Source: Asterias rubens (taxonomy: Eukaryota). Taken from it: DNA of 64,000 nt. Numbering within the stretch: position 1 is the stretch's first letter; the number at the start of each line of letters is the position of its first letter. Below the pieces are notes generated by a model, which had not been told where the DNA came from, searched no databases, and worked only from the letters and a program-made list of their open reading frames with translations. The DNA is taken from NCBI RefSeq assembly GCF_902459465.1, contig NC_047062.1:32178001-32242000 (forward strand), written 5' to 3'. The translations under genes and the position numbers were made by a program. Positions 10,584 through 42,424 of this stretch are shown in pieces.

Positions 10584-12250
10584 GATGAGTCTGGTACCTT
10601 AACCTTTTATTGCTGTAAAACAAAACAAAATACCCTATTATTAGTTGGTTATAACTCTCTTCAAGGCCTCAATCTGTCAGTAATTTCAAACAATTACATT
10701 TAACAACCAATTACTGTAGATTAAAAAAGGTCACATTTGTCAAGTTTGGGCCTAATACTTTACAGAGGCAATGAAGGCGATTGTCTCCATGCCCCCTGGT
10801 CATTGCCTTGGTGCCCTTGAAGTACAGTAGAAATTTACAATTTCTTTATATGATGCCATTATCAAGAGAAATTGCCAGTGGTGCCCTTGTCCTTTCAAAA
10901 TCGAAGCATACAGGCCTCCAAGTCTTTGAAAAGTTGATGACTACCAATAAAAATTTAAGTAAAAACCAATCTCTTTTGAAATGAATGGAAATCATCATAT
11001 AACCATCTTCACCTGTACCTACCTCCTCCACCTTTTCACTCATTTTAACAACCCAAATCATATTTTACCTCAATGATTTAATACAACTGGTAGTCAAATT
11101 CAGCATCATTTCCCAAAGAGCATCAAAAATAAAGAAATTATAAGAAGTTAAAAAAAATGGAGAAGTAAAGAAATGAGTTGATGCTAATAAATCATTGCAA
11201 ACTGGGTTCTTGAATGAAGAACAAAGCGATACATAGTAAAATGCTAGACCCAGTAACTTTGGCGCTGTACTCTGTTTTAAAATAAAATCGAAACCGTCCG
11301 TAAAGCGATTACTCCATGAAGTATCAAGAAACATCTGCGTTAGTCATTTTGACATCTGCAGTCGTAGTACGAACATGCTGAGCCTAGCCAGATGCCAACA
11401 TTTCGGGGGGAAAACAGAGTACTAGGGTCGGGAAAACAACAGTTTACAGCAGCACCCAAATCATAATTGGGTAGTAAAACAGGTATGCGATGGGAACAAA
11501 CAAGCCTATCCCATCTGAAGAAATCTCATTAATTTTATTTTCTGTAGACTGTGTCTGTGTGTGTCACTGTGTGTTTGTTCAATATTATTAATTATTAGTT
11601 AGCTGGTTATTGCATGATTAGGGCCGAACGAAACACAACAACTTAACATTGTATTATTGTATTTGAAACCTGTCCTTGTTAATAAAAAATAATAAATAAC
11701 AAGAAGGTTACAAAATACATTGTCATTAGTATTACAAGGTCAAGGAAGAAAAACACACATTATTGTATACATGGTAAGAAAAGAGTAGACCATGGAGGTA
11801 GACTAAAATTAAACATTGAGGTGATTACTGTTGCGTATCACCATGACGTAACGAATCCCAAGTATTACGTAACACCAATGTCAATAATTCAGCCTTCACT
11901 CAGCATTCCCACACAAGCAGCATTCATTCATGCAGGCAAACGAACAATAAAAACATGAAATAAAAAAACAGTTTTAAAAACAGAAGAAAGTATGCACGGA
12001 ATACAAAATCATGCCATCATTCATCAGAATGTTTTAAAAGCACCTACCTTGAGCTTCAAATCAATGAAACACTGAAAGATTTGACGAAAACCATGGATTA
12101 AATCCCACAACTGCGGAGTTGTTTAGGAACTGTTGGTTTCTTTCGAGCATGAAGTGTACGTTGTGTAATCGTTTTAAACTCCCAGACTTCCAATAGTAAA
12201 TTATATGGTTGTTAATGCAAAACATTTTGGGTACCATGCTAAAAACTAAC

Positions 12251-12418
12251 GTTTACCGAGCGAGAGAGGGCGCTCGTTAAAAAAACTTGGCACACACTCG
12301 GCACCCAGTCTTCTTTTATTGTAACATACCCGCTTTCAGAAATAAAGTACCCGACTAAAAACTTACTGGACTTGCGAGACGAAGAAGGTAGTGAAAGAAC
12401 TTTTGCTCCAAAATGAAG
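12251..12418. promoter_or_regulatory. Putative bidirectional promoter/first-exon module, copy A: minus-strand non-coding first exon of COQ8 and plus-strand ATG-AAG first exon of the HTH-psq gene
   Basis: Minus-strand donor GGTAAAC|GTTAGT at 12251/12250. Plus-strand ATG AAG|GTTTGT at 12413-12419, phase 0, matches the acceptor at 13574. Both donors are conserved in the paralogous module at 21869-22096. Confidence 0.55.
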
Positions 12419-15400
12419 GTTTGTTTTTCTTATTAAAGGAGGAAAGTGATAGTATGAATGTGTTTTTGCAGCGAGACAAACAGACACTGTGGAGTAGTAA
12501 GCCCTTACAAATATTACTTAATTATTCACGGAAGAAGAAGAATTAGGTTCCAGCCAGTCCAGCGCAGGTTGTGTTTGTGTTTGAAACCACACACACACCA
12601 CCCAGTCATCGCCCCTCATAAAATGATAAAATCGCCCCTCCCCCCCCCCCCCGAGACAAAGTTGCCCTCCTTCACTTGTATTTATTTAAATTATTTCACA
12701 ACTGAAGGGTGGGGGGGGGGTCTGCTGATAGGACGGTTAGATATTTGAATTGAAGCTTCCCTGTTTAATTAATTTAATTTTCAGAAATTATTTTGTTTTT
12801 ACATAATTTTTTGTGTTCACTGTCCATCACTGTCCCACTGTCCCACTGTCCCACTGTCGTCCCACTGTCTGATTGACATTGTCCCACTGTCGTCCCACTG
12901 TCTGACTGACACGAACAAAGTAAAACCAACGCCAACGGCAATGTGACAGCTTTAGAGATGTTAAAAGCATAACCCCACAAAGACAACAAACCAGCACCCT
13001 AACAATAAACAAAACAAACACTAGTATGCAAAGGAATGGGAGACATATGAGGCGCTGGAACATAGTGTGCGCGCACATGTACAGTATTGTGCGCTGCTAG
13101 CGAGGGCTGTGAAAAAGCACCGTCCAAAAATCTCCCATTGTGTTATAATAAAAATAATAATAATAATAGTAATAATTAAATCTTGTATACATTGTAGTGC
13201 CAGTATCCGCCAATGCTGGCGCTCATGGCGCTTGGTAAAAAAATCCGCACTCTAGTCAGCTGAGCTCCAAGTGCACTGCTTAAGATACCTAATAAAAAAG
13301 TTTTAGTCATTATGCTCTGTGGTCAAATTCACATGTCCATATCTAAATAGTGTCAAGGCAATGATTAATCATGCATGTTGAACAGATGTGTTTTGAGTGC
13401 TGATTTAAATGTATCAGTCGTGACAGCTCCCCGGACATAATTTGGAATTGACCATTCCATATCTTTGCTGCTGCGAATTGAAATGAACGCTTTCCCCAAG
13501 AGTTGCGTGCCCTTTGTAGTAATCTTACATTATCAATAAAGCTAATTGATGGTTATTTTTATTTATCTTTGTAGAGTGGCAAATCTGAAACCTCTAAAGC
13601 AGGAACCTCTCAGCCTACCATCTTAACACCTGCAAGAATCAAACATGAAATCAACCTGTTGAAAGCATTCCATGCAATGGAAGAGGGCATGTCAGTTTCC
13701 GAAGCATCCAAGCAGTTTGGTTTTCCCGAAGAGTCACTTCAGGTTTGGACCGTAACGAAGATTCCCATCAACCAAGGAAGACCTCAACGGTCCTGCAACC
13801 AGCACAGTGTCCCACCGACAGCAAAGCGTAAGCACATGCCGTACGATAAAGCCAGTTTAGTGAATGCTATGCAGGCAACAAAAGACGGCATGAGCGCTTT
13901 GAGAGCTTCCAAGCTGCATGGTGTACCAGTTTCTACACTTTATGATTGGATCAGAAGAAATGGCACAGGATCAACACGGCGTGACAAGGGTAGAAGAATT
14001 GATGCCATGAATCGCAGAAAAACTCCAAAATCCTCCAAGTCTACACCCTCATCGAATGCCACATATAAGCGCATGCACTATGGTAAAGCCAAGTTATTGA
14101 AAGCGGTCCAGGCAACAAAAGACGGCATGACCATCTGCAAAGCTTCCAAGCTGTATGGTGTCCCAGCTTCAACACTTCGGGATTGGATCACTCAGCGTTC
14201 AAGGACTAAAAAAATCACTCCACCCACTGCCTCACAGAGTGCTAGAAACCAGTATGCTGAGGTGAATACAGTGGATGCACTCAAAGCAATACACGAAGGC
14301 TCCACCATTTTCAAGGCATCTCGACAGTTTGATGTCCCAAAATCAACACTTCATGACAAGATACAAGGTATTATTAGGATTGACAGTACAAAGCATCAAC
14401 AATCCTCCGTGCATAAAAATGTAAAGACACCAAAAACTCAGTACTACAATGAGATCAAGTTGATCAATGCATTCCGTGCTATACCAGATGGCTTGACAGT
14501 TTACAAAACAGCCAGGCAGAATGACATCCCAAAATCAGCACTTCGTCTCAAGATCAAAAAGCAGCCTGGTGTCCAAAAACCAACACTTTGTGACCAGACG
14601 ATAGGCAACGTAAATAATGACAGCACAAAACCCATGGTGTTGACATATAAGCGAAAACGTAGTACGTACAATCAGGACAATTTGATTCAGGCATTCAAGC
14701 TTACACAAGAAGGCACACGTGTTCACCAAGCAGCCAGGCAGTATGGTATCCCAGACTCGACACTTCGTGACATTGTCAAAAAGCAGCGTGGTGTCCAAAA
14801 ATCAACACTTTGTGACCAGACGATAGCTAACGTTAAGAATGACAGCACAAAACCCATGGTGTTGAAGGCTAAACGACAACCTCCTATGTACAATCAGGAC
14901 AACTTGGTTCAGGCCTTCAAGCTTTCACAAGAAGGCACGTCTGTTTGCCAAGCAGCCAGGCAGTATGGTATCCCAGTCTCGACACTTCGAGATTGGATCA
15001 CAAGAAATGTTTCCACTCAACGTTCACAGCCTAAACAAATCCCTCCACCCACTGCCTCACAGAGTGCTAGAAACCAGTATGCTGAGGTGAATACAGTGGA
15101 TGCACTTAAGGCAATACACGAAGGCTCCACCATTTTCAAGGCATCTTGGCAGTTTAATGTCCCAAAATCAACACTTCATGACAAGATACAAGGTATTGTT
15201 AGGATTGACAGTACAAAACATCAACAATCCTCCGTGCGTAAAAATGTAAAGACACCAAAAACTCAGTACTACAATGAGATCAAGTTGATCAATGCATTCC
15301 GTGCTATACCAGATGGCTTGACAGTTTACAAAACAGCCAGGCAGTGTGACGCCCCCAAATCAGCACTTCGTCTCACCATCAAAAAGCAGCGTGGTGTTCA

Positions 15401-16130
15401 AACATCATCACTTTGTGACCAGACGAAACATGTAGGTAGCGTTAAGAATGACAGCACAAAACCCATGGTGTTGAAGGCTAAGCGAAAACGTAGTATGTAC
15501 GATCAGGACAAGTTGGTTCGGGCCTTCAAGCTTACACAAGAAGGCACACGTGTTTGCCAAGCAGCCAGGCAGTATGGAGTCCCAGACTCGACACTTCGTG
15601 ACATGATCAACAAGCAGCGTGGTGTCCAAAAATCAAAACTTTGTGACCAGACAATATGTAACGTTAATAATGACAGCACAAAACGTAAACAATCCTCCAA
15701 TTCCATGGTGTCGACGTCTAAGCGAAAACGTTGTACCTACGATCAGGACAATTTGGTTCAGGCCTTCAAGCTTACACAAGAAGGCACATGTGTTCACCAA
15801 GCAGCCAGGCAGTATGGTGTCCCAGTCTCTACACTTCGTGACATGTTCAACAAGCAGCGTGGTGTCCAAAAACCAACACTTTGTGACCAGACGATAATTA
15901 ACGTTAAGAATGACAGCACAAAACCCATGATGTTGACGTATAAGCGAAAACACAGTACGTACAATCGGGTCGATTTGATTCAGGCCTTCCAAAGTACACA
16001 AGAAGGCACATCTGTTTACCATGCAGCCAGGAAGTATGGTGTTCCAGACTCGACACTTCGTGACATGATCAAACGAAATCCCATTGAGGATGCAAGCAGA
16101 GGCCAAACGAATATATTCACAAGAGATTAA
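12413..16130 (+). CDS. Transposase-derived gene A, N-terminal part: array of 12 pipsqueak-type HTH domains (about 853 aa to the TAA)
   Basis: Exon 1 12413-12418 (MK) plus exon 2 from 13575 (ttatctttgtag|AGT GGC AAA), in frame with the 823-aa ORF. Twelve repeats of the type 'QAFKLTQEGTSVxQAARQYGVPxSTLRD', which is the HTH_psq pattern. Confidence 0.8.
12824..12905 (+). repeat. 8-bp (TGTCCCAC)n tandem repeat in gene A intron 1
   Basis: tgtcccactgtcccactgtcccactgtcgtcccactgtc..., with a secondary ~32-bp duplication. Confidence 0.85.
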
Positions 16131-17348
16131 GAGCAACAGATGGTCAGCCACATCAAGCACATGGCTAATATTGGATATGAGTATTCAAAATCTGACGTCA
16201 AGTTTCTCGCTGGAGATTTTGCAAATGCTTTAAAAATAAATCTCCAAGACAATAAACCACTCTGTGACATCATAGAGCAGGGTGACGTCTGGTATTCTGG
16301 TTTTTCAAAGCGTTGGCCAGACTTACAATTGGTATTAAAGCCCAATCAAGAATCCGAAGCAAGATATGCCTCACAAGACAAAACAGACAACTACTTCAAG
16401 GAATTAGCCTATATCCTTGTCTCAAACGATTTGCTTGAATCTCCCAAATGCATCTATATCATTGATGGATATTTCCTCAGCAAAGAGCATTCTCCGCCAG
16501 AAAGTGCGTTAAATGTCGGCGAAGAGAAAAATAGGCCAGAAAGTGCATCAAATGTCAGCAAAGAGAAAACTCCACCAGAAGGTGCGTCAAATGTCGGCGA
16601 AGAGAAAATTTCAACAGAAAGTGCATCAAATGTCAGCAAAGAAAAAAATCCAACAGAAAGTGCATCAAAAGTCACCACTAAACCGGAAGCAGTTATTGAG
16701 CAGTCAGTGACCATCATTGGGGGAGGCAATGCCAGCGGTTATCACATTCCTCCGTATTTTGTGATCCCTTACGGTTGGAAAGATACGTATCTGGAGGGCT
16801 CTCCTTCAGGATCAGCCGGTGCTGACCAAGGCTGGAGTAACTCGGATGTCCTTAAGAACTATCTCCAGAAGCATTTTGCAAAGTATGCTTATAAAAAAGG
16901 CAAGGGTACAAAGACATTGGTCCTGTATGACGGCAACAAGTACCACCTCTCTCTGTTTATGGCAGACTGGGCCAAGAAGAATCAGGTGATTCTCTTTCCG
17001 TTACCACCGAAGGGAAGTCAGGTGACTGAGCAACAAGACGATGGGCTGTTGGGCCTGTTCAAGTCCATTTATTCCACCGAGTGTCAACTTCATCGTGCAA
17101 ATAACCCCGACACCCAAATTACGAAGCATAACTTTGCCAAACTGGCGGCCAAACCTTACTTGGTAGCAATGTCTCCATCCAACCTGAAAGCTGTATTCCA
17201 CAATGCTGGTATATATCCATTTTCACATGTTCAAGAATGCACCAGTGGAGATTTTCAGGTTGCACACGCTGCTGCCACCATCTCTGTCTTGTCAGATGAC
17301 GTCAAGGGGGAAGTGGAACGCCACAATTCAGGTGGCATGGAAACCTAG
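16131..17348 (+). CDS. Transposase-derived gene A, C-terminal part: CENP-B/Tc5 HTH plus pogo-type DDE_1 domain (DD35D), in frame behind one TAA
   Basis: Reads FTRD*EQQMVSHIKHMANIGY...WYSGFSKRWPDL...IYIID...GGGNASGYHIPPYFV...GWSNSDVLKNYL...LVLYDGNKYH...LPPKGSQVTEQQD. There are 35 residues between the second and third Asp. Confidence 0.75.
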   Translation, partial: EQQMVSHIKHMANIGYEYSKSDVKFLAGDFANALKINLQDNKPLCDIIEQGDVWYSGFSKRWPDLQLVLKPNQESEARYASQDKTDNYFKELAYILVSNDLLESPKCIYIIDGYFLSKEHSPPESALNVGEEKNRPESASNVSKEKTPPEGASNVGEEKISTESASNVSKEKNPTESASKVTTKPEAVIEQSVTIIGGGNASGYHIPPYFVIPYGWKDTYLEGSPSGSAGADQGWSNSDVLKNYLQKHFAKYAYKKGKGTKTLVLYDGNKYHLSLFMADWAKKNQVILFPLPPKGSQVTEQQDDGLLGLFKSIYSTECQLHRANNPDTQITKHNFAKLAAKPYLVAMSPSNLKAVFHNAGIYPFSHVQECTSGDFQVAHAAATISVLSDDVKGEVERHNSGGMET

Positions 17349-17449
17349 ATCCTGAAGTCTACCACGATCTCATCTCCCCTGCTTGACCCTTCAGGTATTG
17401 TATATTTTATTAAGTAGGATTTGAAACTTTGCATGGTGGAAATATGATA

Positions 17450-17700
17450 TGGAAAGGTTTGCGGTAACACCATGTAATGACTATCTCTAATGAGTTGGGG
17501 TGGTTCTGAAAAGAACTGTTGGTTTAACTCGACGTTTCGATCAGTATGCTCCGATAGTCTTCTGGAGAAAAGAAAAAAGCAAAAAAACAAAAAAAAGACG
17601 ATTAGAGTGATTGAAACGTCAAGTTAAACCAACGGTTCTTTTCAGAACCACCCCAACTCATTAGAGATAGTCATAACATGGTGTTACTGCAAACCTTTCC
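17450..17700. repeat. About 250-bp fold-back (inverted pair) of the hammerhead-bearing repeat
   Basis: Arms at about 17450-17568 and 17595-17700 are reverse complements around an A-rich spacer. Confidence 0.9.
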
Positions 17701-18550
17701 ATTTTGTTTATTGCTGCTTCGTTGCTTTGGTATTTTTCTTTTAGTATATTATTGTGTAATATGATTTTTAATGGTTTACTTTTTTAATTGTACATTTTGA
17801 TCGTACATTGTAATTGTTAATTTGCGTTGCATTGTCTCACTTTTGAGATTTAAATTTGGCCTCTAGCTACCAGGCAATCTCGGTTGTCTAGTTGGTAAGA
17901 CTAGACAATTACAAGAGTCTAGAATTGCAAGGGTTCGTGGGTTCGAATCCCACCCGAGTAATATGCCTGTGATATACTGAGTATACAGTGGTAACACACA
18001 ACAGTGTTTGGGTAAACAAAAATAATAATAATATTTGTTATCCCCAATGCAAATTTAACATCTACAGGTTTATACTTTTAAGTTTGGTTGTCACTTTTTC
18101 TAATATTCGTGGTTGTTCTCTGCATTCTAAAGGCACTCGATACTATTGGTAAATGCTCAAAATAGTTGTTAGCATAAAAAGTTTAATATTTGAATTTGAT
18201 TTCGAGACCTCGGAGTTTGAGTTTGAGGTCTTGAGTTAAAGCATCTAAAATGCACACAACTTAATGTTTTTTTCTTTTTCTTCCATTATTATCTCGCAAC
18301 TTTGAAGACCAGTTGAGTTCAAATTTACACGGGTTTATTATTATGTGCATTTGTTGAGATACACCAAGTGAGAAGACTGGTCTATGACAATAATGTCTAC
18401 TTCATTGATTTCATCCTCTGTCGTTGTCATCTTGTGTAATGTGTTTTTTAATGGTTTCATATTTTAATTGAACATTGTCTTGCGTCTTTGAACAGCTTTG
18501 TTTGGAATTGGTGCACTTAAAATTACTTGTTATTATTTATTATTTTTCAG

Positions 18551-18915
18551 TAAGCACCTCAAGTAGCATCTCGCCAGACGGTAAACCATAATCGGAAGTG
18601 GATAAGGCCAACAGCACCAGCCATCAAGCACTGCAGCAGCCTGATCTTAGTCAAATAGACCCAATGTGATAAGTGTGAACACTGGACTCATCTAGGTCTA
18701 ATTTCATGGCTCTGCTACAGAAGCAGGAAATTCGGGGCTTACGTCAATCGTATTTCCCGCTGACACAGCTAGAGCAGAAATTCAGCACTTGCATAGTAAG
18801 CGGAGAATAGTGATCGTAAGCAGAGAGTTTAGCAGTAAGCAGAGCCATAAAATCAGGCCTTATCCTTTTGTACTTTAATATCAGTAATGCAACCTGACAG
18901 TCTGCCCTCATGGCT
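18551..18915 (+). pseudogene. Decayed PHD-finger exon of gene A, interrupted by a MITE
   Basis: Acceptor ttttcag ends at 18550, in phase 1 with the donor at 17394/17395. Reads IKHCSSLILVK*TQCDKCEHWTHL, then a MITE (about 18695-18860), then FCTLISVMQPDS and, after a frameshift, CPH. It also contains stops. Confidence 0.6.
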
Positions 18916-18957
18916 GGGGCAAGTAGAGATTCATGAATTTCTGTTTACACGAGTCAC

Positions 18958-19108
18958 AGGCCTGGAATTTCACTGAGATCATGGTCAATGTTGCCCTGGA
19001 CTTGGCCTTGGTGCCCATTTAAAAGTCACCCAGATAAGGTTTTCCAATGGGAGTACCTTTGCAAAGTGAAAAAGGCCCGGCCCTTTCAAAGATGAAATTC
19101 CAGGCCCG
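18958..19108. mobile_element. Short MITE family with GCCTGGAATTTC termini
   Basis: Internal ttgcccctggtcttggccttggtgccc. Other copies at about 9710-9780, 10760-10920, 37040-37175, 39180-39355, 42530-42700, 56105-56260, 58900-59230, 60270-60410, 61040-61130 and 62080-62300. Confidence 0.75.
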
Positions 19109-19182
19109 GAGTGCAATATAGTTTGTTAGGCATTTTTGTGGTTTGGTTTTGGGTGGTTTTAATTTTTTGTATTGGTAACTAT

Positions 19183-19262
19183 GGGTGCGTTCGTTTAGCT
19201 TCCCTGGGTCGACCCCGATGTGTGGCGTGTGGTCGACCCGGGGGAGCTAAACGAACGCACCC
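19183..19262. mobile_element. About 80-bp hairpin MITE
   Basis: TA|TGGGTGCGTTCGTTTAGCT...AGCTAAACGAACGCACCCA|TA. Confidence 0.65.
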
Positions 19263-21868
19263 ATAAAGAGTGGATATTGGTACTTGATGATAACCAATGT
19301 CATAATGCTTTGGAACAAAAGTTATTAGATTGGTTAATTATTCACAATGGTTGTTCTAAAAAACGGAAAATTATTTGGATGACTTCTTTTACATTTATAA
19401 ACTCCAAGGACAGATTTGTTTATTCTGAACACTATTTGTGACTCGGCACTCAAAACCTTGAGCAATAATGTCTGAAAGGTGCTTTGAAGTTCAAACATTG
19501 AGTAGTTGGTGAGTGTGAACTAAATCTGCCCCTTGAACAAGATGGCGTACAAAAGATCTCTAGATATTATTCCGACAAAACAGCACGTTGTACGTTTTAA
19601 AGTTACCAGCCAAGGATAAAAATACTAGTCAAGAAAGCTGGGTCTATGGGGTCTTGGCTCTTAGGTGATCTCTGTCTTGCTGGGCAAAACTTAGAGGTAA
19701 AAATTTCCTCCCGCGGTCAAACATAAACAACTTGTATCTGTGAAGTTATAATTTAAAGGCACTGGACACATTTGGTAATTGTCAAAGACTAGTATTCTCA
19801 CTTGCTGTCTTCAAAGTTGCAAGAGAGTAATGAAAGAAAAGCGTCCTTGTTGCACAAATGTGTGTGCTTTCCGATATTTTAAAAGGCTTCTGGCCTGAAG
19901 TCTTTTAAAATAAATATTTGAATGAGAAATTACCTCTTTCTGAAAAACTACATTACTTCACTCAGAGGGAGCCCTTTCTCACAATGTTGTATACTATCAA
20001 CAGCTCTCCATTGCTTGTTACCAAGTAAGTTTTTATGCTAATACGTATTTTTAGTAATTACCAATAGTGTCTAGTGCCTTTAATGCATGAATTTTATTTT
20101 ATATTTTTATCTTTTTGGATAAGTCAAAAGCACAGCTGACCCGCTCAGAGGATTGGCAAAAGGCATGTAAATACTTTGTAGCTATACTTTTTAAGAACTA
20201 AACAAAAACTTGGTTTGTTTATCACTTCTGGGCGTTACTCAAAAAACAAATGTCTGTACCTCTACTGCAGCGTTATTTTGCAGAATGTTTTCTGAGATTT
20301 GGCTATAATTTACAGAAGGGAAAAGGCCTGGGGCCAATTTCATAGAGCTGCTTAAGCAAACAATTTGCTTAAGCACGAAAATAGCTCGCTTGTTTTTCAC
20401 ATGTCACTGGCCAAAATGTCATGCCATATACATTGCTTGTGACTGGTACTTAGCTGTTGTTTACTTAGCATAACAATTGAGTGGAGTCTTGGCCGGTAAT
20501 CTGATTTTACTAAGCAAGGATTTTTTTGCTTAAGCAAAATTTTGTGCTTAAGCAGCTCCATGAAATTGGGCCCTGGCATCAAGGAGTTACTCAATGACCC
20601 TGAAAAAAAGAGAGATTACAAGCATAGATTACAGTACCCTGTGTCCATCTTTCTACAGGGGAAACAATTAGAAAGTCCAGGTGAGTCATGCACTTAGTTT
20701 CAACTCACTAAAGCAAACTGAGGGGGCTAGAAAACAATGTCTTCATATTCCTGGTATAAGTGGTTCAATGATAAACATTTGTTTAGCTCAATTAATTGTA
20801 ATCATGGGCTGAGAATAGTAATGATCTCTATGCCAATTGGGAAGTGCGGTGAACAGAGCTATCAAAAAATTACTGAGCGGTTAAGATGAAACGAATAAGT
20901 TTGTGTTATTTTGTAAAACTGTACAAAAGTTTATGCCACCTTTGGAGTCAAAACTTGGAAAAACTTTGGGCATGTAGCAGATAGGCACTGACAAGATTCC
21001 AATTTTGTCCAGAAATTACAGTACGTGTTGGTGGAAATCTTCCTTTGAAATATTTTTGCCTGAAATGCTTTTTGAGAAATGAGCGAAACAATTACTCCAA
21101 AATTTGATGCTTGGAAACTGAAATCAGATCAGGGGGGTTTCAGTATTTACTTGTGACTCTGGTGAACAGTTGAGCCAAGTTTGCACAGTTTTGTTGCTTG
21201 TGATCGTAAAGTTTGGAAACTGATCTACGACAGTTTCCTTTGAAAACTCAGTTGTTATTATTGTGTCAGTTTATTTAAATGACAATGTCACTAGTTTCTC
21301 TGATGACCACCCCCCACCCTCCCCGTCTATATGTAACCTTTTTTTTCTTGAGAAAAGTTATTAATGGTAATGGTTAGGATTTGAACAATTTGTATGGTTG
21401 AAATTTGGCATTGGCAAGATTGGCAGTCTAAGACCAAGGGTTTGGGGTGCTCAAAATAATGTTTGGCGCCACCAGTCTCATCAAAGACCGCTTGGATGGG
21501 GTATACAAGAGCTTTTACGGGAATGATTATATCGCAGTCGGCGCAGTGCCTGCAATCATAAAACTAATGATAAAGCAATGAGGCTGTCCTTACTCTGTGC
21601 ATTTTGTTCATGATCTGTTAGAACAATTAATATTATGTATTCAAGCCCTATCTTTTTTCCAATTCTAAGGCAAAAAGAGTTACAATGATTTTGAAAAGGT
21701 TTTTACAATGGAGTATTATTATTGATGGATGAATCTTTTCTAAAACAGAAGAGGTAACTGTACTAGGTCAGGGGATGGGTCTTTTATTTTATTTCTACCT
21801 CCATGGTCCATCCAAGCCCCCCCCCCCCCGGGGGGGCGGGGCTTGGACCGAGAGAAATAAAAACTTAC

Positions 21869-22096
21869 GTTTACCGAGCGAGAGAGGGCGTTTGTCAAAT
21901 TGAAAAAAACTTGGCACATGCTCTTGCTTGGCACCCAGACTCCCGTTAATGTATATGGCTCCTACCTCCATGCTTAAAGAGTAAGGGGTCAGTCTAAACT
22001 CAATCACACGGCGTGTGTACGACAACCAAAATGTCGACGACTAATAAAAGTGCGAAGAAAGTTTCAGCATTTGCTGCATTTAGCTCCAAAATAAAG
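21869..22096. promoter_or_regulatory. Duplicated bidirectional promoter/first-exon module, copy B
   Basis: Shares acgtttaccgagcgagagagggcg...aaaaaacttggcaca...ggcacccag and gctccaaaat[g/a]aag|gtttgttttt with 12245-12428. The minus-strand donor here is GTAAGT, and the ATG has become ATA. Confidence 0.6.
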
Positions 22097-23090
22097 GTTT
22101 GTTTTTATTGTTAGAATTGTAGCCAATTGTGTCGGTTTAATTGTACGGAGAAGAACATTTCACAATGTGCGCTCTTTTCGTAAATAATGAAAAATAGGTA
22201 GTGCGCCAGGCAGTAGTGGATTTGTTTTGCGCAAACTTCGAAAATTTACTTTTTTTGTAGTTCGCTCGGTGTGCTACTTTGTTCGATCCCTTGCATGAGT
22301 TTTGAATTTGCGCAGAATATCTCGGGCGCAAGCATTGAGCACCGCGCAATCTTTGTAGTTCGACCATCTCCCCAGTTTTATTTACTTTTTAAAAGTTTTC
22401 TTGTAAAAGTTTTCTTATCATGAAAATTACAGATTTAATTTTTAAAGTAAAGTTTTAAAGAGATAAAGAACTGAGCCTGTGTAACTGTAAAGCATAACGT
22501 TAAGTGTAAGTCAAGTTCAGAATATTTCATCAGTAACTCATGTGCTGATTCATGATTGCTGGAATCACAACAAACTCGTTCCTTGCATTTTGTACAAAAA
22601 TTATGCCAGCTTTGATTTCTCTATATTTTATTCTATGACTACGCGCCTGCACCATTGATATCCCGATAGTGGATTTTGTGTGCAGTGTCGAACAGATACA
22701 GACTATGAGACTATGCTTCACCGATATGCAACATTGGATACAGATGACGCGGCAGCTACATGTACAGATAATTGATGAATATTGTTGATAAATGTATTGC
22801 ATTGATTCGCATTAAAATCATAAATTTGTGTTAAAAAAATGACAAATATTACAATTGAACGAAATGACAAAAAATCATAAATGCAAGTTTATAATGTAAT
22901 ATTTGTTTTCATATTAAAAGATTTTTGCTCAAACAATGTTTGTACTTGGTATAAGTTCCTTTATTGTGGTATTGTTGGGCGCTATCGACCGATCACGCTG
23001 CGCTATTGAAATATCTATTGGTCGCGCAACAATCGGTCGATCGCGCAACCATCGGTCGATTGCGCAACATTCCAAAACAAACATGTGCAT

Positions 23091-24267
23091 CGCGATCGGC
23101 CGATTGTTCAGGAATGGTTTTGGTGCGCGATCGGCTGATTGTTCAGGAATGGTTATGGTGCGCAATCGGCCGATTGTTCAGGAATGGTTTTGGTGCGCGA
23201 TCGATCGATTGTTCAGGAATGGTTTTGGTGCGCGATCGGCTGATTGTTCAGGAATGGTTTTGGTGCGCGATCGGTTGATTGTTCAGGAATGGTTTTGGTG
23301 CGTGATCGGCCGATTGTTCAGGAATGTTTTGGTGCGCGATCGGCTGATTGTTCAGGAATGGTTTTGGTGCGCGATCGGCTGATTGTTCAGGAATGGTTTT
23401 GGTGCGCGATCGACCGATTGTTCAGGAATGTTTTTGGTGCGCGATCGGCTGATTGTTCAGGAATGGTTTTGGTGCGCGATCGGCCGATTGTTCAGGAATG
23501 GTTTGGGTGCGCGATCGGCCGATTGTTCAGGAATGGTTTTGGTGCGCGATCGGTCGATTGTTCAGGAATGGTTTTGGTGCGCGATCGGCTGATTGTTCAG
23601 GAATGGTTTTGGTGCGCGATCGGTTGATTGTTCAGGAATGGTTTTGGTGCGCGATCGGCCGATTGTTCAGGAATGTTTTTGGTGCGCGATCGGCTGATTG
23701 TTCAGGAATGGTTTTGGTGCGCGATCGGCTGATTGTTCAGGAATGGTGCGCGATCGGTTGATTGTTCAGGAATGGTTTTGGTGCGCGATCGGCTGATTGT
23801 TCAGGAATGGTTTTGGTGCGCGATCGGCCGATTGTTCAGGAATGGTTTGGGTGCGCGATCGGCCGATTGTTCAGGAATGGTTTTGGTGCGCGATCGGTCG
23901 ATTGTTCAGGAATGGTTTTGGTGCGCGATCGGCTGATTGTTCAGGAATGGTTTTGGTGCGCGATCGGTTGATTGTTCAGGAATGGTTTTGGTGCGCGATC
24001 GGCCGATTGTTCAGGAATGTTTTTGGTGCGCGATCGGCTGATTGTTCAGGAATGGTTTTGGTGCGCGATCGGCTGATTGTTCAGGAATGGTGCGCGATCG
24101 GCTGATTGTTCAGGAATGGTTTTGGTGCGCGATCGGTTGATTGTTCAGGAATGGTTTTGGTGCACGATCGGCTGATTGTTCAGGAATGGTTTTGGTGCGC
24201 ATCGGCCGATTGTTCATGAATGGTTTTAGTGCACGATCGGCCGATTGTGCAGGAATGGTTTTGTGCG
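23091..24267 (+). repeat. 35-bp CpG-rich tandem satellite, about 33 units, with a 344-bp higher-order repeat
   Basis: Unit GATTGTTCAGGAATGGTTTTGGTGCGCGATCGGCY. ORFs 23453-23761 and 23797-24105 are identical and offset by 344 bp. Inverted degenerate units lie at about 22980-23075 and 24413-24652. Confidence 0.95.
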
Positions 24268-24994: not shown

Positions 24995-25367
24995 TTAAAG
25001 GAACACGTTGCCTTGGATCGGTCCAGTTGGTCTTTGAAAAGTGTTTGTAACCATTTGTTATAAAATGCATATGGTTAGAAAGATATTTTAAAAGTAGAAT
25101 ACAATGATCCACACAAATATGCCTCGAAGTTGCGTGGTTTTCTTTTACTTCGCAAACTAACATAGTCGGCCATTTATGGGAGTAAAAAATTTGACTCCAA
25201 TAAATGGCCGACAGTGTTAGTCGATGAGTTACATAGACACCATGCAATTTCGAGTGATACTTGTGTGGATCATTATATTCTACTTTTAAAATATCTTTCT
25301 AATCATACGGTTTACAAATGCTTTTCAAAGACCAACTCGAACGATTGGAGGCAACGTGTTCCTTTAA
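24995..25367. mobile_element. Second copy of the AGGAACACGTTGCC MITE, in gene B intron 1
   Basis: Same terminal inverted repeats and TTAA flanks as 7317-7707. Confidence 0.85.
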
Positions 25368-25703
25368 CTAACTGTGGAATTAGGTTTGGCATTTGATGCT
25401 TAGATGTAGATAGAATCAGCTTTGAATATTAATTCTTTGGACAGTCGTGTTTAGGCTTACAGTTTGTAATTACATATACTTGAAAATACATTTTAAAGCA
25501 TTAACCCCCTCCAAATAAAAATTAAAAAATAGATTTATAATAACAATAGTAATTCATAATACATAAGATTATATATAGATAATTAAATAAATACATTGCT
25601 TGAAACATGAAAAAGAGTTGTGTCATCATTTGGTTGTATTGTCAATCTTTCCTTTGCCTTACCTTGGCCATAGCTAAATTGTGATTGTTTTTATCTTTTG
25701 TAG

Positions 25704-27244
25704 AACGGCAAATCAGAAACCTCTTCTAAGCCCACTCCCTCCCCTGATGAAGAACTTCAAAGTGCTGCAATCATTTTGTTGAATGCCATGCAAGAGATGA
25801 CAGAAGGCGTGGCACCAAGGCAGGATGATGCTCCGGAATCCACACTCCAAGAGAGGCCCAAGAGAAAGGTTACTAATTGTAGACTTAGTCAACACTCCAA
25901 GCGCACCGCATCACCGAAGGAAAAAAGTGAGCATGATGCAGTCCAGACTACACCGAAAAGGAAGTCTGGTACCAAGGCTCAGAAGCAGAAAGGTAACCCA
26001 GTATTGACTATAACCGACAAGGCAAGTGGAAGCCTCAAGAGTGGAAACCGTCAACCAGCTGATCAGCCCGCCACGCCATCGAAGCCAAAACTTAAGCGAT
26101 TCATTCTTTGCGCACCTACCATACAGAAAAAGAAACATCAGTATGATCCGATGAACATGGTGAAGGCTGTTGAAGCAGTACGAGAAGGGTTATCACCATA
26201 CCATGCTGCTTCCAAGTTTGGTGTCCCAGAATCAACAGTTCGCCTCAAGACGAAAGGTATCGTTAAGACTGATAGTTTACAAACTGATCAATCTTCAGAA
26301 CCTGCAAAGCGTTGGTCGTATAGTAAGGAAACTATGTATAATGCATTCCTTGCTGCAAAAAAAGGCATGTCAGTTTGCTCCGCAGCGAGGCAGTTTGGTG
26401 TCCCAGAATCGTCCCTTAGCAGTAGGCTTAAAAGACCTCATCCGCTTGAGGGCACTCGGAGCAGTCCGCTAAAATTATTCACACCCGATCAAGAACAGAC
26501 GTTGATTGACCACATCAAGCACATGGCACGTATTGGATATCGGTTTGCAAGATGTAACATCAGACTTCTCGCTGGAGACTATGCAAATGCCTGCGGGAAA
26601 AAATTGAAAGCGCAAAAACCACTCAGCAGCAATTGGTATGATCTTGGTTTTATAAAGCGTTGGCCAGACTTACAGTTGATCTTAAAGCCCAGCAAAGCGT
26701 CCGAAGCCAGACGTGCTGCCCAAGACGCTTCTGACAACTACTTCAAGGAGTTGGCTGATATCCTCATCACGAACGATTTGCTTGAATATCCCGGCTGTAT
26801 CTATATCATTGATGATTTTAGCACTAAACCAGAAGCAGATGAAGCTCAGGCGATATCAATCATTGCTGGAGGCAATGCCACCGGTTATTACATCCCACCT
26901 TTGTGTTTCCGGGCAAGAAATGAAATCCTATGCTCATCGAGGGCTCTCCCCCCGAATCGGCCGGCGTGATGTCCGACAACAGCTGGTTGAACTCGGTAAT
27001 CCTCAAGAACTATCTTCAGAAGCATTTCGCCAAGTACGCTCACCTAGCAGACTCAAAACGCAAGGGTCTTAAGACATTGGTCCTGTATGACGGCAACAAG
27101 TACCACCTCTCTCTGTTTATGGCAGACTGGGCCAAGAAGAATCAGGTGATTCTCTTTCTGTTACCACCTAAGGGAAGTCAGGTGACTGAGCAACAAGATG
27201 CTGGGTTGTTGGGTTCGTTCAGGTCCATGTATTCCGATTTGTAG
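25704..27244 (+). pseudogene. Transposase-derived gene B (paralog of A): 2 psq-HTH domains, CENP-B HTH and a disrupted DDE domain
   Basis: Acceptor ttatcttttgtag|AAC GGC AAA TCA GAA ACC is homologous to the one in A. The frame is open 25704-26969. There is an apparent 4-nt deletion at about 26900 and a TGA at 26921-26923 (probably from TGG). The DDE remainder runs in a shifted frame to TAG at 27244. Confidence 0.75.

Positions 27245-29471: not shown

Positions 29472-42424
<12,953 letters not shown>

What the first reader, a model, noticed from the sequence alone, without database searches (positions are those of the whole stretch)
12413..17348. Spliced, host-promoter-driven pogo/Fot-like transposase derivative carrying 12 tandem pipsqueak HTH domains
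Seen: a 2-codon exon (MK) splices in phase to a 3.8-kb exon holding 12 psq-type HTHs, a CENP-B HTH and a DD35D domain. I found no terminal inverted repeats, and the gene sits head-to-head with COQ8. Known: pogo-superfamily transposases normally carry one psq/CENP-B N-terminal HTH plus one Tc5 HTH, and have been domesticated repeatedly (CENP-B, TIGD, JRK). Inference: this is a domesticated lineage-specific DNA-binding protein whose recognition module was amplified into an array, conceptually like tandem zinc-finger or TALE arrays. It may bind the TIRs, MITEs or satellites abundant in this genome.
Basis: partly seen in the sequence, partly recalled or inferred. Interest (0 to 1): 0.78.

Follow-up and report, generated by a model that had tools for sequence, protein, structure and literature searches.

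The report
Starfish gene: 12-repeat DNA-binding array
A former pogo "jumping gene" in the common starfish now sits at a fixed place, is spliced from a duplicated host promoter and first exon, and encodes a protein made almost only of 12 psq DNA-binding repeats; this is an unusually repeat-rich case of the well-known process of transposase domestication.

Summary
The window is Asterias rubens chromosome sequence.

**Confirmed**
- The 2-codon exon (12413-12418) splices to 13575. RNA contigs of two independent runs carry the junction.
- Twelve psq-type HTH units follow. The whole-array Pfam HTH_psq E-value is 1.8e-73.
- A degenerate DDE_1 domain with DD35D spacing lies downstream.
- No terminal inverted repeats were found.
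- COQ8 lies head-to-head with the gene.

- An in-frame TAA at 16128-16130 ends the protein right after the array, at 853 aa.
- The DDE part is therefore 3' UTR or a separate ORF.
- In A. amurensis the same codon is CAA. Its ortholog is one 1179-aa ORF with 8 psq units, at the same COQ8-RIOX1 position.

**Selection**
- dN/dS between the two species is 0.47 (0.33-0.69).
- It is 0.26 over the N-terminal units and about 0.8 over the distal units.

**Origin**
- The promoter block, first exon and donor, acceptor and transposase exon are a tandem duplicate, about 10 kb upstream, of RIOX1's promoter and exon 1 and a 3-psq paralog inside the RIOX1 gene span.
- This fits transposase capture followed by segmental duplication and array growth.

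**Verdict**
- It is a domesticated, non-mobile, lineage-specific psq-array protein, and a new variant of a known kind.
- Its DNA targets are unknown.
- The scan's unchecked notes report other domesticated pogo-PHD genes elsewhere in this genome.

The parts
12240..12294 (.). Conserved block of the bidirectional promoter region. It includes the minus-strand donor of COQ8's first exon and is duplicated at 21858-21918.
   Evidence: 85% identity to 21858-21918, while the surrounding sequence is unalignable. The sequence was read.
12366..12418 (+). Exon 1: at least 47 nt of 5' UTR plus ATG AAG (12413-12418). It is a duplicate of the end of RIOX1 exon 1, where ATA AAG has become ATG AAG.
   Evidence: The junction contig extends 53 nt upstream of the joint. 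12401-12435 matches 22079-22113 at 88.6%. Sequences.
12419..13574 (+). Intron 1, 1156 nt, GT..AG.
   Evidence: The joint 12418|13575 is present in contigs of X1 and X4, and intron depth is about 0.
13575..16130 (+). Coding part of exon 2: 851 codons holding 12 psq-type HTH units, ending at TAA.
   Evidence: Translation; Pfam HTH_psq 1.8e-73; unit list; per-unit Pfam scan; NCBI model P0001.
14190..15839 (+). Higher-order repeat: two 825-nt blocks of four psq units each (units 4-7 and 8-11). The first halves are 96% alike and the second halves about 87%.
   Evidence: A. amurensis has one block only.
16128..16130 (+). In-frame TAA nonsense codon. The codon is CAA (Gln) in A. amurensis.
   Evidence: It is carried by RNA contigs X1 15900-16940 (0 differences) and X4 15900-17394. 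The ENA contig shows the same split into two ORFs.
16140..17348 (+). DDE_1 remnant: a 402-codon ORF in the same frame and on the same transcript. D109, D264 and D300 lie at 16464, 16929 and 17037. In A. rubens it is 3' UTR or a separately translated ORF (annotated LOC117297890).
   Evidence: Pfam DDE_1; alignment to intact relatives; coordinates; even transcript depth to 17394; names.
16477..16674 (+). 39-nt (13-aa) tandem repeat inserted in the catalytic core where relatives have the second beta-strand. The inserted segment is about 255 aa in A. amurensis, against about 58 aa here.
18611..18727 (+). Decayed relic of the ancestral transposase's C-terminal PHD-like zinc finger. It has an in-frame stop and lies 1.3 kb past the present ORF.
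   Evidence: tblastn with P0006 residues 606-644, E 3e-6; translation.
21858..22113 (+). Paralogous promoter block plus RIOX1 exon 1 (ATG 22031 to 22096, 22 codons, then GT).
   Evidence: The RIOX1 (JmjC) model starts at 22031.
25704..27244 (+). Paralogous copy 2 inside the RIOX1 gene span. It has a homologous acceptor, one degenerate and two good psq units, and a DDE remnant broken by a frameshift in A. rubens.
   Evidence: In A. amurensis a 772-aa HTH_psq+DDE_1 product shares its start with RIOX1.

Best explanation
This is a domesticated, immobile pogo-family transposase gene of Asterias. SHOWN: it is transcribed from the promoter it shares head-to-head with COQ8. A tiny first exon (5' UTR plus Met-Lys) is spliced to one large exon derived from the transposon. 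In A. rubens translation ends at a TAA just after twelve tandem psq helix-turn-helix units, giving an 853-aa protein that is essentially a string of DNA-binding modules joined by basic Lys/Arg/Ser-rich linkers. The A. amurensis ortholog keeps 8 units and reads on into a crippled DDE domain. INFERRED ORIGIN: a pogo element (psq + Tc5-like HTH + DDE + PHD-like finger) landed in the RIOX1 gene downstream of its first exon. It was captured as an alternative terminal exon through an acceptor directly upstream of its ORF, and lost its TIRs, its second core beta-strand and its PHD finger. Then the block promoter-exon 1-intron-transposase exon was tandemly duplicated about 10 kb upstream. The upstream copy became an independent gene: ATA changed to ATG, giving the MK start. 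Its psq module grew from about 3 to 8-12 units by unequal recombination. INFERRED FUNCTION: a nuclear, sequence-specific, multivalent DNA binder that reads long or reiterated sites, by analogy with the four-psq domain of Drosophila Pipsqueak. It does not transpose.
For: Expression and splicing: the joint 12418|13575 is in contigs of two runs, the intron is empty, and one transcript runs to at least 17394. NCBI's model uses the same junction. Immobility: no TIRs. Protein databases hold only this locus and its A. amurensis ortholog; the next relative is 46% identical. Synteny ABC1/COQ8 - gene - RIOX1 is the same in A. amurensis. Selection between the two species: dN/dS 0.47 (95% 0.33-0.69) overall, 0.26 for the N-terminus plus units 1-3, and 0.35 for the DDE remnant, with dS 0.08. 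Between copy 1 and copy 2, dS is 0.46-0.56 with dN/dS 0.32-0.48, so constraint is long-term. Uninterrupted ORFs of 853 and 1179 codons are kept. Capture and duplication: only the promoter block, exon 1 with its donor, the acceptor and the coding parts still align between the two copies. RIOX1 exon 1 ends ...ATA AAG|GT and copy 1 ends ...ATG AAG|GT. A. amurensis annotates a 772-aa psq+DDE product that starts where RIOX1 starts. Crippled enzyme: the second-strand region is replaced by a repeat in copy 1 and deleted in copy 2, and the DE, HxSH and QPLD contexts are changed, although the three Asp remain. A PHD-finger relic with a stop lies downstream. DNA-binding array: HTH_psq 1.8e-73, and eight of the ten units scanned singly pass the cut-off. 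The mechanism matches the published steps of transposase capture (bioRxiv 10.1101/2020.05.07.082677, read).
Against: The distal psq units (8-12 against a4-a8) evolve at dN/dS 0.79 (0.45-1.57), which is not distinguishable from neutral. In A. rubens both paralogs are damaged downstream of their HTH units: a nonsense codon in copy 1 and a frameshift in copy 2. That could be early decay rather than refinement. Only two species, separated by dS 0.08, could be compared. No protein-level or DNA-binding evidence exists. Units 5 and 9 are not recognised by Pfam (unit 9 by its identity to unit 5). An independent ENA assembly shows an 8-unit form (P0002), so array length may be polymorphic or that contig may be collapsed. 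Logan contigs give presence, not quantitative expression.
Confidence: 0.72

Rival explanations
1. An expressed but decaying relic. The transposon exon was exonised by the RIOX1 or duplicated promoter. It was perhaps once useful, but in A. rubens it is now on its way to becoming a pseudogene, and the psq array grows and shrinks neutrally by unequal crossing-over like a coding minisatellite.
For: A premature TAA in copy 1 and a frameshift in copy 2. dN/dS is about 0.8-0.9 in units 4-11. Unit number differs between species (12 vs 8) and possibly within the species. The 13-aa repeat inside the DDE part expands freely. The PHD finger has already decayed.
Against: dN/dS is significantly below 1 overall and 0.26 at the N-terminal units. 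ORFs of 853 and 1179 codons stay open although the copies differ by dS about 0.5. Splice sites and the promoter block are conserved islands in otherwise unalignable paralogous introns. The nonsense codon falls exactly at the boundary between array and enzyme and in the last exon, so it leaves a complete DNA-binding protein and does not trigger nonsense-mediated decay (inference).
Confidence: 0.2
2. A still functional (or recently functional) transposase or recombinase in A. amurensis-type alleles. The DDD triad is kept because the protein still cuts DNA, and the psq array serves to recognise element ends.
For: All three catalytic aspartates are kept with DD35D spacing in both species and mostly in copy 2. 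The DDE remnant is under purifying selection: 0.35 between species and 0.32-0.48 between paralogs.
Against: The second beta-strand of the RNase H core is replaced by about 58-255 aa of low-complexity repeat, or deleted in copy 2. The conserved DE, HxSH and QPLD contexts are altered. There are no TIRs and no other copies. A. rubens dispenses with the domain in the main ORF. Pfam covers only profile positions 48-176.
Confidence: 0.05
3. The 12-unit array or the stop codon is an assembly or annotation artefact.
For: An ENA contig gives only 8 units and a copy-2-like tail. Repeats are error-prone to assemble.
Against: Contigs of three other A. rubens samples match 14574-14857 (units 6-7, absent from the 8-unit form) with 0 differences, and others match units 10-11. 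The TAA is present in X1, X4 and the ENA contig. The ENA contig's mosaic pattern (block A on the left, block B on the right, copy 2 at the end) is what short-read collapse would give.
Confidence: 0.03

Closest known systems
Pogo-superfamily transposase domestications (CENP-B, TIGD1-7, JRK/JRKL, POGK, POGZ; fission-yeast Abp1/Cbh)
   Same: It derives from a pogo element with a psq/CENP-B-type N-terminal HTH and a DDE_1 core. It has lost its TIRs, sits at a fixed syntenic locus and shows dN/dS below 1. The catalytic domain is kept as a non-catalytic module, or dropped.
   Different: Those proteins carry one psq/CENP-B_N HTH plus one Tc5 HTH. Here the psq HTH is reiterated 8-12 times. The gene is restricted, as far as seen, to Asterias, and in A. 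rubens the DDE part is cut off by a nonsense codon.
Drosophila Pipsqueak and the psq-motif family (Psq, Bab, E93, Ribbon; LCoR in vertebrates)
   Same: The DNA-binding module is the same psq HTH, and it is used in tandem. Pipsqueak has four consecutive psq motifs that together bind GAGA repeats (my knowledge of Lehmann et al. 1998 and Siegmund & Lehmann 2002; the family's pogo origin is restated in PMC10027918). The nearest solved chains by sequence are the LCoR HTH 2COB and Drosophila CG11849 2ELH, both weak matches.
   Different: There is no BTB domain. There are three times as many units. It is a recent, independent derivation that still carries its transposase remnant.
Host-transposase fusion genes born by alternative splicing (SETMAR, PGBD3-CSB, KRABINER; Cosby et al., bioRxiv 10.1101/2020.05.07.082677)
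   Same: The transposon lies in an intron of a host gene (RIOX1). [quoted passage not shown] The exon is used as an alternative terminal exon, and host and fusion products are both annotated (A. amurensis). A later segmental duplication followed.
   Different: The host contributes only the promoter and 22 (copy 2) or 2 (copy 1) codons, with no functional host domain. The novelty lies inside the transposase module (array growth), not in a domain fusion.
P0018, an unnamed 1417-aa protein of an unidentified eukaryote (ENA ERZ25878582)
   Same: It has about 9 psq units (8 passing Pfam, E 2.3e-79), then a Tc5 HTH and a PHD-like finger, with no DDE domain. It is an independent pogo-PHD derivative with a long psq array.
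   Different: It is only about 30% identical. Its units are widely spaced with acidic linkers. It keeps the PHD finger and lacks any DDE remnant. Its organism and expression are unknown.
Tandem C2H2 zinc-finger (KZFP) and TALE repeat arrays
   Same: This is an analogy only. A DNA-reading module is reiterated in one exon, and unit number changes by unequal recombination.
   Different: The fold is unrelated. There is no evidence here for one-unit-one-subsite reading or for an arms race. Recognition helices are fairly similar between units.

Membership tests
pogo superfamily transposase (origin) | N-terminal psq/CENP-B_N-type HTH | tested here: met
   HTH_psq 1.8e-73 and CENP-B_N 1.1e-28 on the array. 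Eight of ten singly scanned units pass the cut-off.
pogo superfamily transposase (origin) | Second HTH of Tc5/CENP-B type (PF03221) | tested here: inconclusive
   No hit in A. amurensis residues 555-720 even at E<=1. The aligned region of relatives P0005 and P0006 gives sub-threshold hits (0.007; 3e-4). Homology is positional only.
pogo superfamily transposase (origin) | DDE_1 catalytic domain with a DD35D triad | tested here: met
   DDE_1 at 30.5 bits against a cut-off of 22, over profile positions 48-176 only. D109, D264 and D300 align with the relatives' aspartates, with D2-D3 spacing of 35. The first third of the core is disrupted.
active (autonomous) DNA transposon | Terminal inverted repeats with TA target duplication | tested here: not met
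   Only chance-level AT-rich pairs flank either copy.
active (autonomous) DNA transposon | Multiple dispersed near-identical copies | tested here: inconclusive
   Protein searches of 5.8 and 1.8 billion sequences return only this locus and its A. amurensis ortholog. The window holds one diverged tandem paralog.
domesticated transposase gene | Orthologous, syntenic position in another species | tested here: met
   ABC1 - gene - RIOX1 in both A. rubens and A. amurensis, colinear at 88-94% identity. Only one other species was available.
domesticated transposase gene | Purifying selection (dN/dS below 1) | tested here: met
   0.47 (0.33-0.69) overall. 0.26 for the N-terminal part, 0.79 (n.s.) for distal units, 0.35 for the DDE remnant. 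0.32-0.48 between paralogs. Nei-Gojobori with bootstrap, not a likelihood branch test.
domesticated transposase gene | Transcribed and correctly spliced from a host promoter | tested here: met
   The junction is in contigs of two runs, and transcript contigs are present in four runs, including a related species label.
host-transposase fusion by alternative splicing | Transposase exon spliced to upstream host coding exon(s) that contribute a host domain | tested here: not met
   Host-derived coding sequence is 2 codons (copy 1) or 22 codons (copy 2), with no Pfam domain. Promoter and exon capture is met; domain fusion is not.
host-transposase fusion by alternative splicing | Co-existence of parental (RIOX1) and fusion transcripts from one first exon | tested here: inconclusive
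   The A. amurensis annotation lists a JmjC product and a 772-aa psq+DDE product with the same start.
Pipsqueak-type psq-repeat transcription factors | Tandem psq motifs forming one DNA-binding domain | tested here: met
   12 units at 58-80-residue spacing. DNA binding itself was not tested.
Pipsqueak-type psq-repeat transcription factors | N-terminal BTB/POZ domain | tested here: not met
   No BTB hit in P0001. BTB is found in the unrelated hit P0016.

The most novel reading that the evidence does not exclude
The psq array is a fast-evolving, modular DNA reader, an HTH counterpart of KRAB-zinc-finger arrays. Units are gained, lost and reshuffled by unequal recombination: 12 vs 8 between sister species, and perhaps variable within A. 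rubens. The distal units evolve at dN/dS about 0.8 because they track changing repeated targets, such as the abundant MITEs or satellites of this genome or the ends of the related pogo-PHD elements. On this reading, the A. rubens nonsense codon is an adaptive step that releases a pure DNA-binding repressor.
Probability: 0.15. Interest if true: 0.8.

Novelty: new variant of a known kind. Interest (0 to 1): 0.5.

Why it matters
Transposase domestication and capture by splicing are well documented, mostly in vertebrates. This locus shows every step of the path in one echinoderm window:
- the parental arrangement (RIOX1 exon 1 plus a transposase exon within the gene);
- its tandem duplicate turned into an independent gene by a single ATA-to-ATG change;
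- growth of the psq HTH module from about 3 to 8-12 units;
- loss of the enzyme part by a single nonsense codon in one of two sister species.

An array of 12 psq HTH units is larger than any other I met in these searches. The next largest are about 9 units in one unnamed protein and, from my own knowledge, 4 in Pipsqueak. If the array binds DNA modularly, it would be a natural example of an extensible HTH-repeat reader. It would also offer a tractable pair of alleles or species (8 vs 12 units, with or without the DDE tail) for asking how repeat number changes target choice.

Tried and rejected
1. AlphaFold2 of the DDE remnant with a 9-sequence alignment gave mean pLDDT 38 and pTM 0.34. That is too poor for any fold search, so the integrity of the core rests on the alignment only.

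2. The third word-indexed protein search (A. amurensis residues 950-1177) returned nothing, not even the query itself. It is uninformative. As a result I never obtained the 772-aa A. amurensis copy-2 protein, and locus L002 ends before that copy.

3. My first dN/dS run used out-of-frame boundaries and a second run timed out. Both are discarded; the valid values are.

4. A simple 'recent 825-bp duplication in A. rubens' was rejected. The two blocks and the single A. amurensis block are equidistant over units 4-5 (about 96%). Units 6-7 are only 76-90% like any other unit. Gain versus loss is therefore unresolved.

5. Hits P0021 (3926 aa) and P0046 (4625 aa), with 16-30 matched stretches, looked like giant psq arrays. 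They have no HTH_psq by Pfam and are low-complexity matches.

6. DNA for the ENA contigs of P0002, P0018 and P0005 could not be fetched because the files are too large. Their organisms therefore remain unknown.

7. I searched unit 1 (17300-21858) for relics of RIOX1 exons. Only interspersed repeats matched.

8. A literature search found no paper describing psq arrays in pogo derivatives or this Asterias gene. Absence from that library is not proof that none exists.

Full report
**Identity of the window.** Protein look-ups place the window on Asterias rubens chromosome record LR699092.1. Window position 12413 equals position 10001 of locus L001.

**What is in the sequence**

- *First exon and splice sites.* ATG AAG at 12413-12418 is followed by GTTTGT. 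At 13574/13575 a polypyrimidine tract and AG precede AGTGGC.
- *Reading frame.* From 13575 the frame stays open for 851 codons and then meets TAA at 16128-16130. After three more codons, an ATG at 16140 opens a 402-codon ORF in the same frame, ending at 17348.
- *The psq array.* Pfam gives HTH_psq at E 1.8e-73 on the first piece. A motif scan finds 12 units at 58-80-residue spacing.
- *Units scanned one at a time.* I scanned ten of the twelve. Units 2, 3, 4, 6, 7, 10, 11 and 12 pass the Pfam cut-off. Unit 1 is just under it, and unit 5 gets no hit. Units 8 and 9 were not scanned; they are 95-96% identical to units 4 and 5.
- *The DDE remnant.* The second piece matches DDE_1 (30.5 bits, cut-off 22), but only over profile positions 48-176.
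- *Second HTH.* HTH_Tnp_Tc5 is not detected, even at E<=1.
- *Catalytic residues.* In the alignment with the nearest intact-looking relatives (41-46% identity), all three aspartates are kept and D2-D3 spacing is 35. The neighbouring DE, HxSH and QPLD contexts are altered.
- *Disrupted core.* The segment that forms the second core strand in relatives is replaced by a 39-nt tandem repeat at 16477-16674.
- *Zinc-finger relic.* A relic of the relatives' C-terminal PHD-like zinc finger, with an internal stop, lies at 18611-18727. The original element therefore reached at least that far.
- *No TIRs.* No credible terminal inverted repeats flank it.

**Transcription**

I laid contigs of four public runs on 12000-17900.

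- Runs X1 and X4 come from different studies and share one species label. Each has a contig with the joint that skips 1156 nt, with GT..AG ends, equivalent to 12418|13575.
- Intron bins have depth of about 0. Exon bins are even, at about 91 (X1) and 15 (X4), from 13575 to 17394.
- Contig X1 15900-16940 has no differences from the window. Contig X4 15900-17394 differs only at 17112, 17265 and 17266. Both therefore carry the TAA, and no splice removes it.
- An independent ENA assembly also splits the frame at the same place: ORFs end at 2537 and begin at 2547.
- Contigs matching units 6-7 exactly (14574-14857) occur in three samples, so the long array is not peculiar to the reference individual.
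- Runs under another species label (X16-X19) hold the transcript at a few percent divergence.

**Comparison with A. amurensis**

- *One ORF there.* The ortholog XP_071794904.1 (P0013, 1179 aa) begins with the same MK exon and acceptor. It has CAA where A. rubens has TAA, so it is one ORF.
- *Fewer units, larger repeat.* It has 8 psq units, and its 13-aa repeat segment is about 255 aa.
- *Same neighbours.* ABC1/COQ8 lies upstream on the minus strand and RIOX1 downstream. The region is colinear, at 88-91% identity in most non-coding blocks (a few reach 95-98%) and 93.7% in the ungapped coding block 15014-16674.

dN/dS values (Nei-Gojobori with bootstrap; dS between the species is 0.08):

| Region | dN/dS | 95% interval |
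|---|---|---|
| Whole gene | 0.47 | 0.33-0.69 |
| N-terminus plus units 1-3 | 0.26 | 0.10-0.65 |
| Units 8-12 vs a4-a8 | 0.79 | 0.45-1.57 |
| DDE remnant | 0.35 | 0.19-0.65 |

- *Unit orthology.* The matrix pairs r1-r3 with a1-a3, r4 and r8 with a4, r5 and r9 with a5, r10 with a6, r11 with a7 (86%) and r12 with a8. Units r6 and r7 have no A. amurensis partner.
- *Gain or loss?* Over units 4-5 the three sequences are equidistant at about 96%. I therefore cannot say whether A. rubens gained four units or A. amurensis lost them.

**Where the gene came from**

- *A second copy.* A second, diverged copy lies at 25704-27244 on the same strand, inside the span of the RIOX1 gene model. It has one degenerate and two good psq units and the same deletion of the second-strand region. 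In A. rubens it also has a frameshift.
- *What still aligns.* Comparing the two neighbourhoods, only four kinds of segment align:
  - a promoter block that includes the minus-strand COQ8 donor (12240-12294 with 21858-21918);
  - the end of exon 1 with its donor (12401-12435 with 22079-22113);
  - the acceptor with the first codons (13549-13595 with 25678-25724);
  - the coding parts.
- *RIOX1 exon 1.* It is ATG at 22031 through AAG at 22096, 22 codons, ending ...ATA AAG|GT. The upstream copy reads ...ATG AAG|GT. The MK exon is therefore a duplicated RIOX1 exon 1 whose original ATG is gone and whose ATA became ATG.
- *Shared start in A. amurensis.* Its annotation lists a 772-aa HTH_psq+DDE_1 product with the same start as RIOX1. 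That is what capture as an alternative terminal exon predicts.
- *Age and constraint.* Between the two copies dS is 0.46-0.56 with dN/dS 0.32-0.48. The duplication is several times older than the species split, and the DDE-derived part was constrained for most of that time.
- *Published parallel.* This sequence of events matches the published steps for host-transposase fusion genes (bioRxiv 10.1101/2020.05.07.082677). The difference is that the host gives only a promoter and a few codons.

**How it most likely works**

*Shown:* it is a single-locus, syntenic gene that is spliced and expressed from a bidirectional host-type promoter. Its A. rubens product is an 853-aa chain of psq HTH units. 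The TAA lies in the last exon.

*Inferred:*
- With no exon junction downstream of the TAA, the mRNA should escape nonsense-mediated decay.
- The protein is nuclear. Basic KRK-type stretches precede most units.
- It binds DNA multivalently, as the four-psq domain of Pipsqueak does. That comparison rests on my own knowledge of Lehmann et al. 1998 and Siegmund & Lehmann 2002.
- It cannot transpose.
- The DDE-derived part probably served a non-catalytic role, and A. rubens has just dropped it from the main ORF. In A. rubens it could still be translated from the ATG at 16140, which is untested.

By outgroup comparison in the alignment, A. rubens does not show an excess of derived amino-acid changes in that part. 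This is a by-eye count of roughly 4 changes in A. rubens against 8 in A. amurensis, so it is weak. It fits a recent nonsense mutation.

**How unusual is it**

- An exhaustive phmmer search of 1.84 billion representatives found 86 hits. Only this gene family scored below 1e-30.
- Other multi-psq proteins exist. They include 5-unit proteins, one of them from Selaginella. A BTB protein with 4-5 psq units has the same domain architecture as Pipsqueak.
- There is also one 1417-aa protein of an unidentified eukaryote with about 9 psq units, a Tc5 HTH and a PHD-like finger, but no DDE.
- Long psq arrays in pogo derivatives have therefore arisen more than once. Twelve units is the largest I saw.
- Unchecked notes of this scan report other domesticated pogo-PHD genes elsewhere in this genome, one also as an intron-1 terminal exon. 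That suggests this transposon lineage is captured recurrently in sea stars. I did not test those notes.

**Verdict.** The domestication reading holds. The gene is a new variant (an 8-12-unit psq array, born by promoter and exon capture plus tandem duplication) of a well-known kind. Its DNA targets and its biological role are unknown.

Noticed in passing
window 17449-17702: A 254-nt MITE-like palindrome (95-nt arms, 95% complementary) sits just past the transcript's end. Its contig word depth is enormous in all four runs (up to about 240,000, against about 90 for the gene), with many rearranged joints. It is a very abundant repeat family, present in RNA libraries.
   Followed up: no
window 22946-24218: A 35-nt satellite array of about 35 copies (consensus ...GATCGGCCGATTGTTCAGGAATGGTTTTGGTGCGC...) lies within the RIOX1 gene span, between exon 1 and copy 2.
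   Followed up: no
ENA contig of P0002/P0012 (3539 nt, ERZ23498428): An independent assembly gives an 8-unit array whose breakpoint joins unit 5 to unit 9. Its DDE ORF ends like copy 2 (...SMYSDL). This is either a short-read collapse or chimera, or a real recombinant or gene-converted allele.
   Followed up: partly
window 16839-17075 vs 26990-27235: The 3' part of the two paralogs is 87-92% identical, while the 5' DDE part is 70-80% identical. This suggests gene conversion between the copies.
   Followed up: partly
L002 13250-14030 (A. amurensis): The 13-aa PESASNVSKEK-type repeat inside the DDE core is about 255 aa in A. amurensis and about 58 aa in A. rubens. NCBI isoform X2 of A. rubens lacks one 13-aa unit.
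   Followed up: partly
window 30783-31365: 54-nt and 27-nt tandem repeats. The 54-nt repeat lies in a plus-strand ORF encoding [18 protein letters not shown] units. It may be a low-complexity RIOX1 exon, but I did not map the RIOX1 exons.
   Followed up: no
window 31404-32226, minus strand: ORFs of 125 and 167 aa with a motif (...[13 protein letters not shown]...) that I recall from LINE ORF1-type proteins. This is probably a retrotransposon fragment.
   Followed up: no
window 13195-13517: An intron segment is matched by expressed contigs with about 10% differences and a 57-nt replaced stretch, at high depth (2544 in X1). It is a dispersed repeat, not part of the gene's transcript.
   Followed up: no
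window 24995-25367: Another MITE-like nested inverted repeat (56-nt arms at 88% and 118-nt arms at 81%) lies about 340 nt upstream of copy 2's acceptor.
   Followed up: no
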